A stretch of 64,000 nt of DNA from Thecamonas trahens ATCC 50062 (lineage: Eukaryota > Protista > Apusomonadida): positions 16,832 to 80,831 of the forward strand of contig NW_013657630.1 of assembly GCF_000142905.1 (NCBI RefSeq), written 5' to 3'. This document shows positions 3,001-37,591 of the stretch, piece by piece (position 1 is the stretch's first letter; each line of letters starts with the position of its first letter). The notes under the pieces are model-generated. The model was not told the origin of the DNA, ran no database searches, and saw only the letters and a program-made list of their open reading frames with translations. The position numbers were made by a program, and so were the translations under genes.

Positions 3001-4281
3001 ACCTTGCCCTTTTTGTCGAGCTTGGGCTCCTGCGCGTGGAAGACCGTGACGCCAAACGTCTCGAGCGACCGCGCGAGCTGGATGAATCGGAACTTGGCGT
3101 CGTGGCCCGACATCCGCAGCAGCTTCTTGTGCTCGGCAAAGACAAGCCGGTCGATCCGCTTGACCTTGCGGAACTCCTTCGGCAGGTACGAGATGACCGA
3201 CGTGGTCTTCTTGTTGTGCCGTGACGGGTCGTGGTCGCCAAGAATGATCTGGCACATGAGCGCGGCAAACATAACCGCCTCGTCCTGCCGCACTACAAGC
3301 CGCCCGTTGACAATGTCATCGCGGAGCTGCTCGTACAGCAGGTTGAGTGTCTGCGGGTCCGACGTGTCCACGTCGGCGTCAAAGAAGAAGAACTTCTTCT
3401 TGAGAAGCACCGCAGACGTGTCCGGCACGGCTTGCTCGTGGAGCGTTGCGTTGCCGCGAAGCCACTCGTCATCGCCGGCCGCCTTGGCCGCCTTCTCGCG
3501 CGCCTTGCGCGTCTCCTCGTCGGCCTCCTCGTCAAAGAGCTGCAGCGAGAACTCTTCGGGCTTGGAAATGCCCTGCCGCGCGCAGATGGTCTCCACAATC
3601 TGCGACACAACGTGCGAGTCGTCGATCATGACCACCTTGCGCGAGCCGTCCATGAGGTACACCCGCAGCGGCCGGTTGCGCGACTTGTACACCACCTCGT
3701 CGAGGTTGTGAATGTCGTAGTACCGCAGCGTCTTGGTCGGGTCCAGCCAGTAGCACTTGGTCAGATCGTGGCCCGAGAGAAAGTACATGCCCTTGTCTGG
3801 CGAGTGCTCGAGGCCAAAGTTCGCCGCAATCGCCACGCAAGCGTCGTGCACGTACGTCGTCTGCAGCCGACCAGCAAAGGCGACAGAAATCCAGACAACA
3901 AGTAGTAAGTACTCCTTACACATACCCACACCCACCACCACATACCCACCGTCTCCCACCCATACCCCTCCCCTCCGTCCTCCTCCTCCCGCATGTTCGC
4001 CCGCAATGAAAATTGGTCCAGAAACGGCTGCGGGCAAACTCGATTGCTGCCGCAAGTTCAACAACCTCCCCCCCCACCCCCGTCCCCCTCTGCTCCAACC
4101 CCCTCCTACGTACATTATCAAACTTCATAGACTTTGTCCGCGAGTTAATGGCCTTGGTCTTGGGGTCAGTAAACTCGACTGTGATCTTGATGGTCAGCGA
4201 GGCGCCCGACGTCGCCACAGGGTCGACCTCTTGGAACAGCGAAGCCTGGAGGTTGAGCCCAGCGCCGAACGAGGTAGACAT
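1..4281 (-). CDS. TLN: Talin (FERM F0-F3 head plus start of the helical rod); 3' end runs off the window
   Basis: Exon 1 is 4281-4114 (MSTSF...KSMKFDN), followed by intron 4113-3861 (GTACGT...CAG). Exon 2 (TTYVHDAC...RPLRVYLMDGSRKVVMIDDS...LLKKKFFFFD...YEQLRDDIVNG...LETFGVT...RRWAPSKSSITLDYGD...EGDAISALIAGYIDIIL) matches the talin head. An Ala/Leu-rich rod continues in another frame from about 2590 to position 1; one extra G in the run at 2610-2613 joins the frames. Confidence 0.95.
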
Positions 4282-4556
4282 GGTCGTTGAGGAGGATTGG
4301 AGACGGGTGTACCAATCGCTAGTTGGCAGAGCCAGCTGGTGTGTTGGGGGGTGGGGAGGGCAAGATGGGGCGTGGGGCGTACGACGTGGGGCGAGGGCCT
4401 TGGTGAGGGGCGGGGCGCGAGGAGCGCACAGGGGGGGAAAGAGACAGGGCGAACCTGGCCCTTGGCCGGCTGTGCATGCACCGCAATGTGGCGGTGTCTG
4501 TTTTGGCTTGCGAATGGTTTTGTGGGTGGTGAGGGATGGGGGGGGGGGGGGGGGCC

Positions 4557-31028: not shown

Positions 31029-34001
31029 ATGTCCTACCAACCCCCTCCCAAACCGGCCCCTCCTCCCCGGCCAGCCAAGCCACCTGTGCCCGAGCCGCCG
31101 ACCTCGTCCGGTCTCCCGCCGCCACCGCTGCCTCCGCCGGCACACTCGCCTGCGCCACCCATGCCCGCACCGCTGCACCCTGCCGGGAACCGCGGCCATG
31201 CCGGATCGGCACCCGGGCCTGCCCTCCCTCCTCCGCCGCCGGTACTTGCGCTCGATGCGACAGGGGTCGACGAGGCGTACTACGACAACCTCGAGGACGA
31301 CGTCAACGATGACGACGACGACGACGACGACGACAACTACGATGATGATGACGATGATGATGACGATGACGTCGACGAAGAGGAAGAGCTGCGGAGGCGC
31401 AGGGCTACCGGCCGATCTGACGATGGCCTCTTCGGCAATGTCCTCTCCGAGCTGATCAAGGCCCGCGTGCCCGGACGGAGGCAGTCGGGCAGGTCTCGCA
31501 GCGGACGGACGCTGCCGTCGACGCCTGGTGAGCCGTCCCGGCTCTCATCGTCGTCAATGGCTGCTGCAGCTGCCGCACGGGCGGCAGGTCCAGTCAGAGG
31601 CGGTGGGAACGGCTCTCCGCGTCGGCTCGCCCACGATGGCTCGCTCACTACGCCGTCGGGCTCGCCGCGCTCCAAGCGGGCGTCGCTGGCGGCAGACGAC
31701 TCGCTGACCGAGGGCATTTCGTCGAACGACGACGAGACGGCCGAAGACTTCTCCGACGACGAATACTCGACCATGCTGGCGTATGGCCACTTTCAGTCGG
31801 CCAACGCGTCCAAGGACTCGTTCCGCTACGTCGCCAACACCCTCCTGCACTCGTCGCTCTCCATCGATGACCCGACGCTTCCGCCGCCGCTCCCGCCGCC
31901 AGCCGCCGCGCCTTCTAACCTCAGCACCCGCAGCCCGCCGCCGCCGCCGGCCGGCTCACTCGCCACCCCGGCAAGCCGCCAGGCCTACCGTGCCCAGCGC
32001 GCCTCGACCTCGGGCACCTTTGGCCTCCTGTCTGAGCGCCCCAAGAAGCCCGCCCGCCCGCCGCCGCGCCCGCCTAGCATGCCGTCGTCGCCCGCCTCAT
32101 CGCCGCCGGTCTCACCGTCATCGGGCTCGTTCCCCGCTCCGCCGCCGGCGCTCTCGACCCGTCCCCCGCCGGTCGGCCCGCGGGTCTCGTCGCAGCGCTC
32201 GTCAACGATAACCGCGCTCTCGCGGAGCGCGCCGCCGCTTCCGCGCTCGCGGCCGTCGTCGATGCCGCTCAAGGCCCGCATCGCCCCGCCGTCGTCGTCG
32301 CTCGGCAAGCGCATGTCCGCGCCCGTCGACTCCTTCCGCACCTCGACTCCGCCACCGCCCGCCCTCCTCCTCGCTCCGCTCCCGCTCGTCCCGCGGCTCG
32401 CGCCCGACACCCGCACCGCCCTCGAGTCGGCCCGCTCCCGCGGCAAGCCGTCGTCGTCGCGGTCCGGCACTGCGCCCGGTGGCTCCCAGTCGCCGCGCGG
32501 TAAGCGGTTCTCACGCGACCTCTCGACCCGCACGCCGCCGCCACCGCCGGCCCCAGCGCCTGCAACCGCCTCGCCGCCGCGGACCAAGCCACGGGTCTCG
32601 GTGCCGGGCGCCGACGCGCAAGCCAAGAAGACCAAGATGAACCTCGCTCGCGACATCAACCTTCTCGGCGCTGCTCGCGGCATTTTCGAGCCCGAGCCTG
32701 TTGCGGAAGAATACGTTGATCGGGCCGACCTCCGATGGATGACCGCCGACGAGCACATCGCCGCCTTTGGCGAGGGCTCGACCGAGATCCGCGAGATCGA
32801 CGCCGCCTCGCTCGCTGCCCTCGTGGAGCAGGCCACCCACAAGCGGTCGAACACCAAGCTCCAGATGCAGCTCCTCCTCTCGTACCCAGGCTACACCACA
32901 GCCCACGACCTGCTTGCTGCCATCATCGACCGCTACTGCATGGAAGTGCCGCTCGGCCGCGAGAAGGAGGTCATCCCGGTCCGGGTCCAGGCCTTCCACA
33001 TGCTCAAGCTCTGGCTCGCCGAGCGCCCGTTCGACTACACCGAAGACCCCAAGCTGGCCGACGCGCTCCGCGCCTTTTTCGACGGCACTCTCCCCTCGAT
33101 GGGCCTCGCCCGCACCGGCCAGGTCCTCAAGCGCTGCCTCGCAAAGACGCTCGAAACATACTGCGGTGACGGCCAGTCGCTCAAGGCCTCAGACATCCTC
33201 TCGGCCCACGCCATGATCAAGGCGCCCGCCGCCGCCACCATGGGCCTCGCCTGGACCGACATCTCGGACAAGATCCTCTCGGAGCAAGTTACCCTCTATG
33301 ATGTCGAGCTGTTCAAGAAGATTGGCGTCCGCGAGCTGTTCAACAAGGCCTGGTCCGACAAGCACCGCAAGCATGAGCGCGCGCCCAACGTGCTTGCCGT
33401 CATCTCATGGTTCAACCACTTTTCGTCGTGGATCATCACCCAGATCGTCTCCGAGACTTCGTTCAAGGCCCGCGTTAAGCTCGTCGCCCGCTTCATCACC
33501 CTCGGCAACCACTTCCGCGTCCTCAATAACCTCTCGGGCGTCATGGCCGTCGTCGCCGCTCTCAAAACCGCAGAGGTCAAGCGCCTCGCAAAGACCTGGG
33601 AAAAGATGTCGTCCGCCGACATGCTCCGCTTCGAAGCCCTCACCGACATCGTCTCCATGAAGAAGAACTACGCCAACATGCGCCGCATCGCGAACTCCAC
33701 CCCCGATGACGGCTTCTGCCTCCCCTACCTCGGCATGTACCTCTCAGACCTGACCTTTATGGAGGACGGCAATGTCGACACCGTCGACGACGGCCTCATC
33801 AACTTTCGCAAGTGGCGCGGTGTTGCCTCCATCATCGGCATCATCCAGCGCCATCAGAAGATGCAGTTCAACAAGCCTGTCCACACCGCCGTCCGCGCCT
33901 ACATCAAGACCGCCACCATCTTTGACGACGAGCGCGCCTACGAGGAGTCGCTCCTCCGCGAGCCGCGTAAGAAGAAGCGCAAGAAGGCTACCAAGAAGTA
34001 G
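31029..34001 (+). CDS. Ras-family GEF (Pro-rich disordered N-terminus, REM and CDC25 domains)
   Basis: REM LLLSYPGYTTAHDLL, HMLKLWL; CDC25 SEQVTLYD, WFNHFSSWI, LNNLSGVMAVVAAL, LPYLGMYLSDLTFMEDGN, INFRKWR, SLLREPR; polybasic C-terminal tail. Confidence 0.93.
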   Translation: MSYQPPPKPAPPPRPAKPPVPEPPTSSGLPPPPLPPPAHSPAPPMPAPLHPAGNRGHAGSAPGPALPPPPPVLALDATGVDEAYYDNLEDDVNDDDDDDDDDNYDDDDDDDDDDVDEEEELRRRRATGRSDDGLFGNVLSELIKARVPGRRQSGRSRSGRTLPSTPGEPSRLSSSSMAAAAAARAAGPVRGGGNGSPRRLAHDGSLTTPSGSPRSKRASLAADDSLTEGISSNDDETAEDFSDDEYSTMLAYGHFQSANASKDSFRYVANTLLHSSLSIDDPTLPPPLPPPAAAPSNLSTRSPPPPPAGSLATPASRQAYRAQRASTSGTFGLLSERPKKPARPPPRPPSMPSSPASSPPVSPSSGSFPAPPPALSTRPPPVGPRVSSQRSSTITALSRSAPPLPRSRPSSMPLKARIAPPSSSLGKRMSAPVDSFRTSTPPPPALLLAPLPLVPRLAPDTRTALESARSRGKPSSSRSGTAPGGSQSPRGKRFSRDLSTRTPPPPPAPAPATASPPRTKPRVSVPGADAQAKKTKMNLARDINLLGAARGIFEPEPVAEEYVDRADLRWMTADEHIAAFGEGSTEIREIDAASLAALVEQATHKRSNTKLQMQLLLSYPGYTTAHDLLAAIIDRYCMEVPLGREKEVIPVRVQAFHMLKLWLAERPFDYTEDPKLADALRAFFDGTLPSMGLARTGQVLKRCLAKTLETYCGDGQSLKASDILSAHAMIKAPAAATMGLAWTDISDKILSEQVTLYDVELFKKIGVRELFNKAWSDKHRKHERAPNVLAVISWFNHFSSWIITQIVSETSFKARVKLVARFITLGNHFRVLNNLSGVMAVVAALKTAEVKRLAKTWEKMSSADMLRFEALTDIVSMKKNYANMRRIANSTPDDGFCLPYLGMYLSDLTFMEDGNVDTVDDGLINFRKWRGVASIIGIIQRHQKMQFNKPVHTAVRAYIKTATIFDDERAYEESLLREPRKKKRKKATKK

Positions 34002-34251
34002 TTTGCGCCCCTCCCGTACTCAATCTCTCTCTCTCCACCCCCCTTTCTCCGTCCCCTTCGCTTGCTCGCGATCTCCTGCGTTGGGGTTTTTGCTTCACAA
34101 ACTACATCAGACGTCGCTCGCGACATCGTCATCATCATACACCCTCCCTCCCTCCAGAGCCTTGCAGTGCATCTGCTGCCACCGCACCCTCACACTCGAC
34201 GCCCATACATACCGGGGTGGAGCGCAAGAGCCAAAGGCGGTGGCAAGACCA

Positions 34252-35597
34252 TCATGCCTTTTGCCGCAGCGCCGTCGTGGTGAACGACGCCAAGTAGTTG
34301 CGGTAGTTGACCTTGACAAAGGCGGCGAGAGCCTCGACGGCGGCGGCAAACGATCCTACGTTGCGCTCCTCGCCGGGCCGCGGGAAACGCCCGCTGAGCA
34401 TCGCGCACCGGGCCCGCTTCACAGTCCAGTTCTGCAGCGCCCGCGAGACCGACTTGTGGTTCTTGACGTGCATCAGCTTGGCCGCCCGCGTCTGCGTCAG
34501 CCCCGTGTGGTTCATCAGCAGATACCACGCCAGCTGCCGCGCGAGATGCACCAGCGGCTTCTTGGACGTCGACCGGACCACGTCCGTCGTCATGCCAAAG
34601 CCGCCGGCCACAGCCTGCACAATCGTCCGCACCAGCGGCTTGGCCGCGCTCAGCGAGTCACCACCGCCACCGCCCGCCCACTGCAGACCTGCGAGTCCGA
34701 ATCCAGGTCTCCAATCGGGGCGATGCGCTTGCGCGAGAGGTTGGCCACCACCGCCGTTTCAGGCGCAGCAGCCTCCTCCTCACCATGATCATCGCCATCG
34801 CCATCGCCATCGCCAGCCTCGCCGAGGTCGAGCTTCCGGTTGCGTGCCCGTGGCGACGCCGACGGCGGCGATGAGCTGACAGCCCGCGGCGATGGGCCGC
34901 GCGACTGCGCCGGCGAGCTTGCCGAGCTGCCCGAGCGCTGCGACGAGACCGACCGCCGCGACGAGGGCGACCGCCGTGACCGAGTCAAGCATGCCTCGGG
35001 ACTGGGTGTCCGCCCGGTCGGCGTCTGGGGCGACGCAAGCAGGCGCGACGCAAGCAGGAGCGAGTCAAAGCCCGACGGCGAGAGCGGCGGGTCGGGCGAG
35101 GCCGGAGGTTGGCGGCGGCGGCGGCGGAAGGACGACGATGATGACGACGACGGCGGCGGCGGCGATGTGTGGCCCGACGGCGAGGCGAGGACGGCCTGGC
35201 GCTTGTTGGCCGGCCCGCCACAGGCATACTCATAGCCCAGGCCGGCACCAGAGTCACCCCGTCCGCGCTTGCGTCCGCTCTTCCCCGCCCCTTCCGCTTC
35301 CCTCCGGGGGCTGCCGGCAGGAAAAGACCGTGCGTGGCCCGGGCGGCAATGGATAGCGCTGCCGGTGGCGGTAGATTCTACCGCCAAACCGGAGTGGCTG
35401 CCGGCCGGGCGGCACTTTGTAGAATCTACGCTCGAGCCGCCAGCCGAGCTCGCCGGCTGGCGGAAGACAATGGGGCCAGACAGCTCGAGGCAGCTTGGGT
35501 TTCGGCTAAGGGTAGCTCTAGTGTATGTGGGTGTGCTCCGCATGGTGGGACTGGTGCCACTCGCCTGGAGCACTGGCAGAGCTGTCGTCCGTCCCAT
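34252..35597 (-). CDS. Putative DNA-binding protein: Ser/Pro-rich disordered N-terminus plus C-terminal DnaA domain IV (Bac_DnaA_C)-like helix-turn-helix
   Basis: ORFs 34650-35597 and 34252-34632 join after +1 G at 34677-34679. IVQAVAGGFGMTTDVVRS....VHLARQLAWYLLMNHTGLT........KNHKSVSRA aligns without gaps to DnaA domain IV. Confidence 0.72.
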
Positions 35598-36475
35598 GCC
35601 GTCACTCGCTGGCCGCTGCGTGGGTCAAGTGCTCCCGCCGCTCCGCCCACCAATCGATTTTGCCGCTGCCTGTTTTTGTGGGACATTTGCGCTGCCTCCT
35701 TTCTCGCCTGCTTCCTGCCGCCGGTCCAGAACCACGGCCCAAGGCCATGGAATGCGGCATCCACTTCTAGATCTCCCTTCGCAAGCCTTGACGGCCCCTC
35801 CTCGCCCCTCCAATATCAGTATCCTCTTCGACACATGTCATGTCTCTCGCTGCACTTGTCCTGCCAGCGGCCTTTGAGGGCGAGCGACAGCGATCAAAGC
35901 AAGAGAGACACAATCTGACGCCATCACATCGTTGCAGAGGCTATAGCGTAGCTTGAGTTGAAAAATCTTCTCGTTGCGACAAGCTCTGCCATGCCTACAG
36001 TCCTAGACGCGTAAGCGGTTTGCCGTCTCAGAAAAGCCGATCACGAATTGCACAAAGTGCGCCAATCGCCACTTCATTTTGGCGCCATTTCCACCCTCGT
36101 CCCCTGCTTCACCCCCATCTACGCACCAACCACCCCTCTCCGCCCCCCCCCCCTCCACACACAGCTGGCCAGCATGCTCACACTACGGGACAATCAGATC
36201 TCATCTCCGCCCGCGATCTCGAGCCATCTGCGGCTCTACCGTTCCAATCGCACCGAGGCAATCAAGAAAATGACGAGTGACTGCGCATGGCATGGAGGGA
36301 GGTAAAGTTGGCCCACTGGCGTCTTCAACCCCCCCTGGTACGCGGAAGGTGGCCCTGATTTCAACAGCGTTCCGGCTACAGAATTTGATTGGCTTGCACT
36401 ACGTCTGTACGCGGTGGTGTCGTTGTGGGTGAGACAGAGATGCCTGTGGCCGGCGTGCGTGTTTGACCGCGGTCA

Positions 36476-37591
36476 ATGTGCTGTCCGAGGTTGCTTCTTG
36501 CATCCCGCCACACTCGACTCGGCATCATGCTGCTCGATCGGGCGCGACAAGTGGTCATCATGGGCATGCGGATACAGCAGACGAGTGTGGGCCGAGCCCA
36601 GGGGGCTGCTGCCGCCGCGGCAGCCACCGAGGTCTCCGAGTGGCTGGCACTGGTTGCCGAGGTGGCGAAAGAGGCGTCGGCGTTGTCTGGTGCGAACAGA
36701 GAGGCTGGGGCTGAGGCCGAGGCTGATGCCTCCGCCGGGCTCGCCGACGCTATTGCGACGGCCGAAGACGCCCAGATTGACGAGATGTACCATTTGGCGC
36801 TGGATGAGGCGGCGTGTCCGGGCGGCGGCGGCGGCGGAGCGTATGTGGCGATCGCGCCGGGTGCAGGAGGGGCGGATGCCGGCGAGTGGGCGCAGATGCT
36901 GGGCGCGATGTATCTGCGATGGCACGGGCGACACGCGCGCGGGCGTGATGCCTCGCAGGCGGCATGCAATGCAGCCGGGGCCCATGGCGTCGATCTTGTG
37001 CTTCCGGGCGTGCGGGCCGAGGGCTGGCTGGCGCACGAGACGGGCGTCCACAAGCTGGTCCGCCGCTCGCCCTTTGCCAGCGGGCGGCGGCACACCTCGT
37101 TTGCCTCTGTACGAGTCCTCCCACTGCCTGGCGAGGCTGCGCGCGGCCCCGACGGTGACTCGCTCCTTGCCTCGCCCGACGTGAGGGTTGAGACGTTCCG
37201 GGCGTCGGGGCCGGGCGGGCAGAGCGTGAACACCACCGACTCGGCCGTCCGCCTCACCCACCTGCCGACCGGCATCTCGGCCGTCGCCGCCGATCGCTCG
37301 CAGGGTGGGAACAAGCGGACAGCAGCACGGACGCTGGCTGCCAAACTAGCTGCTGCCGCCGCCGATGCTGCCGCCGCCGACTCGGCTGCCGCCTATGCCG
37401 CTCTGGATCGCAATGCTTTTGGTTCGGGTGGTGTGGTGCGGTCGTACGTGCTCGACCCGTACACCATGGTCAAGGATGCTGCCACAAGCATCAAGACGCC
37501 ACTGGTCCACGATGTGCTTGACGGTGGTGCCTCGCTCGACACACTCCTTGTCGCCGGCCTCGAGGCCCGCCTCGCGTCGCCGGCCCACTGA
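36476..37591 (+). CDS. prfB: Bacterial-type peptide chain release factor 2, probably mitochondrial (mtRF2)
   Basis: GAGGADAGEWAQML..MYLRW, ETGVHKLVRRSPF (the SPF stop-codon-recognition motif), RRHTSFASV, TFRASGPGGQSVNTTDSAVRLTHLPTG, RSYVLDPYTMVKD. The Arg-rich, acid-poor N-terminus could be a presequence. Confidence 0.9.
   Translation: MCCPRLLLASRHTRLGIMLLDRARQVVIMGMRIQQTSVGRAQGAAAAAAATEVSEWLALVAEVAKEASALSGANREAGAEAEADASAGLADAIATAEDAQIDEMYHLALDEAACPGGGGGGAYVAIAPGAGGADAGEWAQMLGAMYLRWHGRHARGRDASQAACNAAGAHGVDLVLPGVRAEGWLAHETGVHKLVRRSPFASGRRHTSFASVRVLPLPGEAARGPDGDSLLASPDVRVETFRASGPGGQSVNTTDSAVRLTHLPTGISAVAADRSQGGNKRTAARTLAAKLAAAAADAAAADSAAAYAALDRNAFGSGGVVRSYVLDPYTMVKDAATSIKTPLVHDVLDGGASLDTLLVAGLEARLASPAH

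What the first reader, a model, noticed from the sequence alone, without database searches (positions are those of the whole stretch)
34252..35597. Eukaryotic protein carrying a bacterial DnaA domain-IV-like DNA-binding HTH: candidate domesticated transcription or replication factor
Seen: the last ~125 aa align without gaps to the DnaA C-terminal domain. LVRTIVQAVAGGFGMTTDVVRSTSKKPLVHLARQLAWYLLMNHTGLTQTRAAKLMHVKNHKSVSRA compares with the DnaA pattern I...VA.YY......LLS..R...V..PRQ.AM.L....T..S...IG..F..RDHTTV.HA. There is no AAA+ domain. Instead, after repairing one G, the domain is fused to a eukaryote-style disordered region with NLS-like basic clusters (RKRGRG, PANKRQ, RRRRR), many S/T-P sites, an RKLDL cyclin-docking-like RxL motif and an FDSLLLAS amphipathic motif. 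The recognition helix is altered (DHTTVLH becomes NHKSVSR), which implies a new sequence specificity. Established: this domain binds DnaA boxes in bacteria and also occurs in phage and transposase proteins; I know of no described eukaryotic nuclear TF family built on it. Inference: a horizontally acquired HTH recruited as a possibly cell-cycle-regulated TF, analogous to the KilA-N origin of fungal SBF. It lies among intron-containing eukaryotic genes, so simple contamination is unlikely.
Basis: partly seen in the sequence, partly recalled or inferred. Interest (0 to 1): 0.9.

Follow-up and report, generated by a model that had tools for sequence, protein, structure and literature searches.

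The report
Protist gene with bacterial DnaA DNA-binding domain
A single-copy gene of the marine protist Thecamonas trahens joins a long disordered region to a complete copy of the DNA-binding domain of the bacterial replication starter DnaA; it is a real, conserved gene and probably a borrowed DNA-binding regulator, but what it does is untested.

Summary
The window is the public Thecamonas trahens assembly, and the locus is AMSG_09456, which UniProt auto-names "DnaA C-terminal domain-containing protein".

- **Domain:** The minus-strand piece 34255-34647 scores above Pfam's threshold for Bac_DnaA_C (E 2e-9).
- **Fold:** Two AlphaFold models, one built without any bacterial sequence, superpose on solved DnaA domain IV at Z about 12. 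The next family scores Z 5.4.
- **No ATPase:** There is no AAA+ domain.
- **Fusion:** The upstream 315-aa ORF is disordered and lies one base out of frame. An independent contig of the same organism carries one extra base at 34676/34677, which joins the two ORFs. Two related sequences have uninterrupted ORFs of the same design.
- **Host-like and constrained:** The gene is single copy and has host-like codon bias. dN/dS is 0.12-0.22 against a 72%-identical marine relative.
- **Origin:** The three eukaryote-like sequences form one long-branched clade. The bacterial or phage donor is unresolved.
- **DNA contacts:** Only R407 and H434 of the DnaA-box-contacting residues are kept, and R399 becomes K. 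The altered N-H-K start of the recognition helix also occurs in stand-alone bacterial paralogues.

Nuclear location, DNA specificity and cell-cycle control are untested. I rate it a new variant of a known domain family, of moderate interest.

The parts
35595..35597 (-). Likely start codon of the gene (first ATG of the 315-aa ORF)
   Evidence: the marine relative also starts with a complete ORF of similar design. The public model P0002 starts 18 codons further in.
34677..35594 (-). N-terminal region: basic (pI 11), S/A/R/P/G-rich, no Pfam domain, predicted disordered
   Evidence: The ESM Atlas model of P0002 has mean pLDDT 0.51. GC3 signal is clear only for 34880-35210.
35034..35075 (-). Only conserved motif of the N-terminal region: SGFDSLLLASRLLA, with a hydrophobic-x-x-hydrophobic-hydrophobic core (FDSLL)
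   Evidence: BLASTP 9/14 identical to SGLESLLIASGLVA of the marine relative. P0003 has LSSLF at the aligned place.
34790..34815 (-). 6-bp tandem repeat encoding (Gly-Asp)n in the linker
   Evidence: sequence
34641..34688 (-). Frame break between the two ORFs. The probable 1-base omission in the assembly lies at 34676/34677. The public model removes this stretch as a 48-nt 'intron'.
   Evidence: Extra C behind +34676 in an X7 contig that reads through 34414-34764 unspliced. The model junction ...DSDSQ|PLVRT... is seen in P0002. No GTACGY donor-like motif lies anywhere in 31275-36338.
34351..34638 (-). Complete DnaA-domain-IV-like fold (residues 4-99 of the 131-aa piece)
   Evidence: VIA-align Z 12.2 to 3pvp_A (95 of 96 aa) and Z 12.0-12.2 to 1j1v_A (92-93 of 94 aa); next family Z 5.2-5.4.
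34432..34629 (-). Pfam Bac_DnaA_C match (residues 7-72)
   Evidence: E 2.1e-9, 37.7 bits, above the cut-off of 31.5
34408..34494 (-). Helix-turn-helix (helices 52-58 and 64-80). The recognition helix starts N63-H64-K65-S66, where E. coli DnaA has D433-H434-T435-T436.
   Evidence: secondary structure; gap-free alignment, offset +370
34258..34359 (-). Two C-terminal helices (residues 97-113 and 115-130). The first partly matches the last helix of domain IV. The second is an extension conserved only in the three eukaryote-like sequences.
   Evidence: dN/dS 0.22
34252..34254 (-). Stop codon

Best explanation
This is AMSG_09456 of Thecamonas trahens, a single-copy and probably intron-less nuclear gene. 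Its product is about 450 aa. It has a long basic disordered N-terminal region with one conserved hydrophobic motif (FDSLL). This is followed by a complete DnaA-domain-IV fold (basic loop plus helix-turn-helix) and one extra C-terminal helix.

Shown: the domain, the fold, the chromosomal setting, the conservation and the selective constraint.

Inferred:
1. The frame break in the assembly is a one-base homopolymer error, so the two ORFs make one protein.
2. The domain came from a bacterial or phage stand-alone DnaA_C protein by horizontal transfer into the apusomonad lineage, before three sampled lineages split, and has since taken on host codon usage.
3. The protein binds double-stranded DNA through the HTH and the basic loop. 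Its target would differ from the DnaA box, because four of the five major-groove contact residues differ.
4. The disordered region recruits partners, which would make it a transcription-factor-like or chromatin-bound regulator.
For: - Pfam hit above threshold in the window and in the marine relative (E 7e-10), weaker in P0003 (E 5.5e-5).
- Fold: Z 12 over 92-96 residues to four solved DnaA structures, with the next family at Z 5.4. This also holds for a model made from the three eukaryote-like sequences alone and searched against 48,161 chains.
- Chromosomal setting: contig C50 is 300,393 bp, the same record that carries AMSG_09456. The gene is single copy in the 28.7-Mb genome.
- Codon bias: GC3 is 0.89 against 0.84 for the neighbouring RasGEF.
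- Fusion: extra base in X7; continuous 348-aa and 354-aa ORFs of the same design in relatives; shared motif in the upstream part.
- Constraint: dN/dS is 0.12 for the HTH part and 0.22 for the extension. The T>C difference at 34357 seen in X7 and X2 is synonymous.
- DNA binding: the HTH part has pI 12, with 13 K+R against 1 D+E. The positions of R407 and H434 are identical and R399 becomes K. The roles of these residues come from my own knowledge of the 1J1V complex.
- Donor pool: stand-alone DnaA_C proteins exist in Dehalococcoidia, in an ICE-like element and in many tailed phages.
Against: - No transcript evidence of known kind. Runs X6 and X7 are of unknown library type. The metatranscriptome contigs are short and could be DNA carry-over.
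- The extra base rests on one contig at depth 2.9.
- A profile of the three eukaryote-like sequences alone finds no DnaA chain in the PDB by sequence, so the sequence link rests on the Pfam profile and the fold.
- Nothing shows location in the nucleus, DNA binding or a regulatory role.
- The donor is unresolved: the clade sits on a branch of 4.5 changes per site.
Confidence: 0.6

Rival explanations
1. The protein is sent to the mitochondrion, where it binds mitochondrial DNA as a nucleoid, replication or transcription factor. This would keep a bacterial-type DNA-binding domain in a bacterial-type compartment.
For: The first ~35 residues of the window protein and ~65 residues of the marine relative lack acidic residues and are rich in R, S, T, A and L. 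The domain is bacterial in kind.
Against: The N-termini are proline-rich and are not alignable with each other. P0003 has two Asp in its first 8 residues. No targeting predictor was available. The long basic S/P-rich region resembles nuclear disordered regions as much as a presequence.
Confidence: 0.12
2. The frame break is real and the gene is a recently inactivated remnant of a transferred gene (a pseudogene) in this strain.
For: The reference assembly has the break. The annotators needed an odd 48-nt intron to bridge it.
Against: An independent contig restores the frame at exactly this place. GC3 of 0.89 and dN/dS of 0.12 show long-kept coding constraint. There are no other stops in either piece.
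Confidence: 0.07
3. The assembly is right and the two ORFs are joined by splicing of the annotated 48-nt intron (34688..34641). The protein would be the 363-aa public model, or a version of it.
For: The public model P0002 uses GT...AG ends and keeps the frame. The result is still the same fusion protein.
Against: The X7 contig reads through the stretch unspliced and has the extra base. The stretch is about 74% G+C and keeps G/C at 11 of 14 third positions in the downstream frame (my own count from the sequence). The donor GTCTGC does not fit the GTACG donor that other readers noted in this genome. GTACGY is twice as common as chance in the window (68 against 36, 0 of 100 shuffles) and absent from this gene. 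The relatives have no intron here.
Confidence: 0.12
4. It is the DNA-binding protein of a mobile element or integrated virus, not a host gene.
For: Stand-alone or repeated DnaA_C proteins sit in phages and in an ICE-like element with integrase, primase and helicase genes.
Against: The gene is single copy in the genome. It has no neighbouring transposase, integrase or capsid genes and is flanked by RasGEF and RF2. Codon bias is host-like. There is no hit in PHROGs or IMG/VR.
Confidence: 0.05

Closest known systems
Domain IV of the bacterial replication initiator DnaA (Pfam PF08299; PDB 1J1V, 3PVP, 1L8Q, 8BTG)
   Same: Whole fold (92-96 residues, Z 10.6-12.2). Same order of helices, with a basic loop before the long helix and then the HTH. 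Identical residues at the positions of R407, Q408 and H434, and a basic residue at R399.
   Different: No domains I-III, so no AAA+ ATPase, no oligomerisation and no origin melting. P423, D433, T435 and H439 become T, N, K and R. There is one extra C-terminal helix. The domain is joined to a ~310-aa disordered region and encoded in a eukaryotic chromosome.
Stand-alone DnaA_C paralogues of bacteria (Dehalococcoidia, 104-136 aa) and of tailed phages; multi-repeat DnaA_C proteins of ICE-like elements (P0004, P0005)
   Same: The domain occurs without the ATPase. The best sequence matches outside the family are 28-40% identical. The Dehalococcoidia proteins share the N-H-K-[ST] start of the recognition helix.
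   Different: They are short single-domain or repeat proteins without a disordered region or the C-terminal extension. No tree support links them to the eukaryote-like clade. Their own functions are unknown.
Eukaryotic regulators built on DNA-binding domains taken from viruses or bacteria (for example the KilA-N-derived APSES/SBF domain of fungi; my own knowledge)
   Same: The idea is the same: a foreign DNA-binding domain joined to eukaryote-type disordered regulatory sequence.
   Different: Different fold. No functional evidence here. Known so far from one genome and two environmental sequences, not from a large expanded family.

Membership tests
Bac_DnaA_C / DnaA domain IV fold | Score above the curated Pfam threshold | tested here: met
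   37.7 bits against 31.5. The marine relative scores 39.3. P0003 scores 23.5, below the cut-off.
Bac_DnaA_C / DnaA domain IV fold | Three-dimensional fold covering the whole domain | tested here: met
   Z 12.0-12.2, rmsd 2.1-2.6 Å, 92-96 residues aligned; next family Z 5.4. Holds for a model made without bacterial sequences.
Bac_DnaA_C / DnaA domain IV fold | Basic loop residue (R399) and R407 for DNA contact | tested here: met
   K29 and R37 in the gap-free alignment. The residue roles come from my knowledge of 1J1V.
DnaA-box binders | Base-contact residues P423, D433, H434, T435 and H439 | tested here: not met
   T53, N63, H64, K65 and R69: only H434 is kept. A different target sequence is expected.
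DnaA replication initiator | AAA+ domain III (PF00308) and domain I (PF11638) | tested here: not met
   No Pfam hit in the 315-aa upstream ORF, and no further minus-strand ORF up to 36400.
Stand-alone bacterial or phage DnaA_C proteins | Branches inside a bacterial or phage clade | tested here: inconclusive
   The three eukaryote-like sequences form a 100/100 clade on a branch of 4.5 changes per site, using 73 columns. No donor is resolved.
Eukaryotic sequence-specific transcription factor | Nuclear location and sequence-specific DNA binding with an effect on transcription | not testable with these tools
   Only indirect signs: a basic HTH (pI 12), a disordered region and a conserved FDSLL-type motif.
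Host nuclear gene (not contamination) | Physical linkage to eukaryotic genes and host-like composition | tested here: met
   Same 300-kb contig as RasGEF, INCENP and RF2. GC3 is 0.89 against 0.84.

The most novel reading that the evidence does not exclude
AMSG_09456 and its two environmental relatives would be the first eukaryotic family of nuclear, sequence-specific regulators built on the DNA-binding domain of the bacterial replication initiator. On this reading the domain was captured from a bacterium or phage in the apusomonad lineage, retargeted to a new DNA motif, and equipped with a disordered region carrying an activation-type motif.
Probability: 0.35. Interest if true: 0.6.

Novelty: new variant of a known kind. 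Interest (0 to 1): 0.45.

Why it matters
Apusomonads are close relatives of animals and fungi, and their regulator sets are used to reconstruct the ancestor of both. A conserved gene that reuses the DnaA DNA-binding fold without its ATPase would be a further clean case of a foreign DNA-binding domain becoming a eukaryotic protein. It would also give a natural variant of the DnaA HTH with changed contact residues for studying how this fold reads DNA. The finding also corrects a public gene model: both annotated introns look artificial, and one masks a probable one-base assembly error. Its reach is limited. The family has only three known members, no function has been shown, and the domain call already exists in UniProt.

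Tried and rejected
- A 95-nt intron of my own (GTGAGG at 34783 to AG at 34689) would also join the frames. I rejected it because the X7 contig reads through 34689-34764 and GC3 favours the upstream frame there.
- Sequence searches of the PDB found no DnaA chain, either with the single piece or with the three-sequence profile. Only the Pfam profile and the fold give the link.
- PHROGs: no hit.
- The exact junction pattern, with or without the extra base, gave no match in JGI metagenome contigs.
- Family searches in JGI metagenome contigs and in IMG/VR found no relatives.
- The N-terminal 40 residues of the window protein and the marine relative look alike by eye but give no significant alignment, so I do not claim this.
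- The donor tree is unresolved.
- E2F-like TTTSSCGC sites number 20 against 12.3 expected, and 2 of 100 shuffles reach 20. One TTTGGCGC lies at 36078 in the upstream spacer. This is not enough to claim cell-cycle control.
- Paper searches for Thecamonas plus DnaA, for Bac_DnaA_C, and for DnaA domain IV in eukaryotes found nothing on this protein.
- I did not build or search a joined or repaired protein. The two pieces were searched apart by reference, and the public spliced model P0002 was used only as returned by the tools.

Full report
**What and where.** The window is G+C-rich (about 65%) and eukaryotic in gene content. It is contig C50 of a 28.7-Mb genome. C50 is 300,393 bp long, the same length as the record that carries protein P0002. 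P0002 is KNC53741 / XP_013754304 / A0A0L0DNZ5, locus AMSG_09456 of Thecamonas trahens ATCC 50062. NCBI calls it "uncharacterized protein" and UniRef calls it [quoted passage not shown]. So the locus is a known, automatically annotated gene of the public apusomonad genome.

**The observation.**
- On the minus strand there is a 315-aa ORF (34650-35597). One base out of frame, an open frame runs from at least 34758 to the stop at 34252.
- The piece 34255-34647 (131 aa) hits Pfam Bac_DnaA_C at E 2.1e-9 and 37.7 bits, above the curated 31.5. The hit covers residues 7-72 and profile positions 2-67 of 69.
- The upstream ORF has no domain hit. It is basic and rich in S, A, R, P and G.
- The ESM Atlas model of the public protein has mean pLDDT 0.51.

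**Is the domain real?**
- An AlphaFold model made with 33 sequences has pLDDT 89 and pTM 0.86.
- Its best PDB matches are all DnaA domain IV. Foldseek gives probability 1.00. VIA-align gives Z 12.2 to E. coli 1j1v_A (92 of 94 residues, rmsd 2.4) and Z 12.2 to M. tuberculosis 3pvp_A. The next family (ParB/Spo0J) scores Z 5.2.
- That alignment contained bacterial sequences, so I made a second model from the three eukaryote-like sequences alone (pLDDT 80). I searched it against 48,161 PDB representatives without Foldseek. The top four are again DnaA (Z 12.2, 12.0, 11.8, 10.6; 93-96 residues), then Z 5.4.
- The fold assignment is therefore robust.
- Sequence-only searches of the PDB with the piece or with the three-sequence profile find no DnaA. 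The family is divergent.

**One protein or two ORFs?**
- Relatives: P0001/P0007 (72% identical) come from Tara Oceans and other marine metagenomes, and P0003 (55% identical) from one Logan run. They have uninterrupted ORFs of 348 and 354 aa with the same plan: a disordered N-terminal part, the domain, and a conserved C-terminal extension.
- Shared motif: the upstream ORF of the window shares its only conserved motif with them. SGFDSLLLASRLLA matches SGLESLLIASGLVA at 9 of 14 positions, and P0003 has LSSLF at the aligned place.
- Independent contig: in run X7, which carries the same coded organism label as the best holder X6, a 425-nt contig lies on 34414-34764 without a gap. It has one extra C behind +34676, which lengthens the CCC run at 34677-34679. 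On the coding strand this is one more G, and it places the two ORFs in one frame.
- Second difference: the same contig has T>C at 34357, also seen in a metatranscriptome contig of X2. It is a third-position change, gta to gtg, and so synonymous (sequence).
- Public model: P0002 instead removes 34688..34641 as a 48-nt intron and 35429..35280 as an in-frame 150-nt intron (derived).
- Splice donors: other readers of this genome noted GTACG as the usual donor (unchecked). In this window GTACGY is about twice as frequent as chance (68 against 36.1 ± 6.6, 0 of 100 shuffles). None lies between 31275 and 36338. The two annotated donors (GTCTGC, GTAGAT) do not fit it.
- Conclusion: I take the gene as intron-less, with a one-base homopolymer error in the assembly. 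The evidence is one contig at depth 2.9, so this needs confirmation. Either way the product is the same kind of fusion.
- Handling: I did not build the joined sequence. All searches used the pieces by reference, or the public model as returned.

**Host gene, not contamination or an active element.**
- The gene is single copy.
- It lies tail to tail with a RasGEF gene (stop at 34001) and head to head with an RF2 gene (start at 36476).
- GC3 is 0.89 for the domain piece, against 0.84 for RasGEF.
- dN/dS against the marine relative is 0.12 for the HTH part and 0.22 for the extension, with dS about 1.5, which is near saturation.
- There is no PHROG hit and no relative in IMG/VR or JGI metagenome contigs.

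**Origin.**
- A search of 1.84 billion representatives gives only six hits. Three are the family itself. The others are P0004 (five DnaA_C repeats, in an ICE-like context with integrase, primase-like and RecD-like genes), P0005 (two repeats) and P0006.
- A profile search adds a family of 104-136-aa stand-alone DnaA_C proteins, 35-40% identical over 63 residues. They belong to Dehalococcoidia genomes that also have a normal dnaA.
- Structure and language-model look-alikes include many stand-alone "DnaA C-terminal" proteins of tailed phages.
- In a 73-column tree the three eukaryote-like sequences form a 100/100 clade on a branch of 4.5 changes per site, outside all sampled bacterial groups.
- A bacterial or phage source is likely because the fold is otherwise prokaryotic. 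The donor is not resolved.
- That the two environmental relatives are apusomonads is an inference from their shared design.

**How it probably works.**
- The gap-free alignment to E. coli DnaA domain IV has an offset of +370 from residue numbers in the 131-aa piece.
- It gives R399→K29, R407→R37, Q408→Q38, P423→T53, D433→N63, H434→H64, T435→K65 and H439→R69.
- From my knowledge of the 1J1V complex, R399 reads the minor groove, and P423, D433, H434, T435 and H439 read bases in the major groove.
- The backbone-binding frame is thus kept and the reading residues are mostly changed. I expect DNA binding, but not to the DnaA box.
- The HTH part has pI 12.
- N-H-K-[ST] is shared with the Dehalococcoidia paralogues, so this change predates or parallels the eukaryotic capture.
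- The extra C-terminal helix (residues 115-130) is conserved in all three relatives. It could serve in dimerisation, which is untested.
- The FDSLL/LESLL/LSSLF motif has the form of many activation or co-regulator-binding motifs. This is an inference only.
- I put about 0.5 on a nuclear transcription-factor-like role, about 0.12 on a mitochondrial DNA-binding role and about 0.07 on a pseudogene.

**Expression.** Marine and subsurface metatranscriptomes hold short contigs 99-100% identical to parts of the gene: X2 at 34344-34598, and X1 at 34995-35146 and 34118-34264. This hints at transcription, but such libraries can carry DNA. The library type of X6 and X7 is not on record.

**Verdict.**
- The cell-cycle and NLS details are not conserved.
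- The domain call already exists in a public database, and no paper describes the protein.
- I rate it a new variant of a known domain family, with interest 0.45.

Noticed in passing
window 35280-35429 and 34641-34688: Both introns of the public gene model AMSG_09456 look artificial. One is an in-frame 150-nt stretch without stops. The other bridges a probable one-base assembly error. Neither has the GTACG-type donor that is enriched in this window.
   Followed up: partly
window 34357: A T>C difference from the reference (synonymous, gta to gtg) is seen both in run X7 of the same organism and in a subsurface metatranscriptome contig (X2). It is either a strain variant or a second reference error.
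   Followed up: no
window 34118-34264, 34344-34598, 34995-35146: Marine and subsurface metatranscriptomes contain contigs 99-100% identical to this Thecamonas locus. T. trahens or a near-identical strain therefore seems present in those samples.
   Followed up: no
L007:4468-8022: A bacterial ICE-like region carries a 673-aa protein made of about five DnaA_C repeats beside a second 124-aa DnaA_C protein. The region also has an integrase, a DnaG-like zinc ribbon, a RecD-like helicase and a T2SSE ATPase. The function of such repeat proteins is unknown.
   Followed up: no
L008-L017 (match at about 4001-4340 in each): Dehalococcoidia genomes carry a conserved stand-alone DnaA_C paralogue (104-136 aa, recognition helix starting N-H-K-T) in addition to a full dnaA on the same chromosome (P0021 and P0093 on one 3.14-Mb contig).
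   Followed up: partly
window 36078-36085 and 35659-35666: TTTGGCGC and TTTGCCGC (E2F-like) sites lie in the spacer upstream of the gene, which it shares with the RF2 gene. The motif count in the window is only weakly above chance (20 against 12.3).
   Followed up: partly
window 33772-34788 (+) and 36376-37344 (-): Long antisense ORFs (338 and 322 aa) overlap real genes. They are artefacts of the high G+C content and should not be read as genes.
   Followed up: no
window 34790-34815, 35111-35152: Short coding tandem repeats, (GAT GGC)n for Gly-Asp and triplet runs for Ser and Pro/Arg, lie in the disordered region. The read tool masked 34765-34824 as repeat.
   Followed up: no
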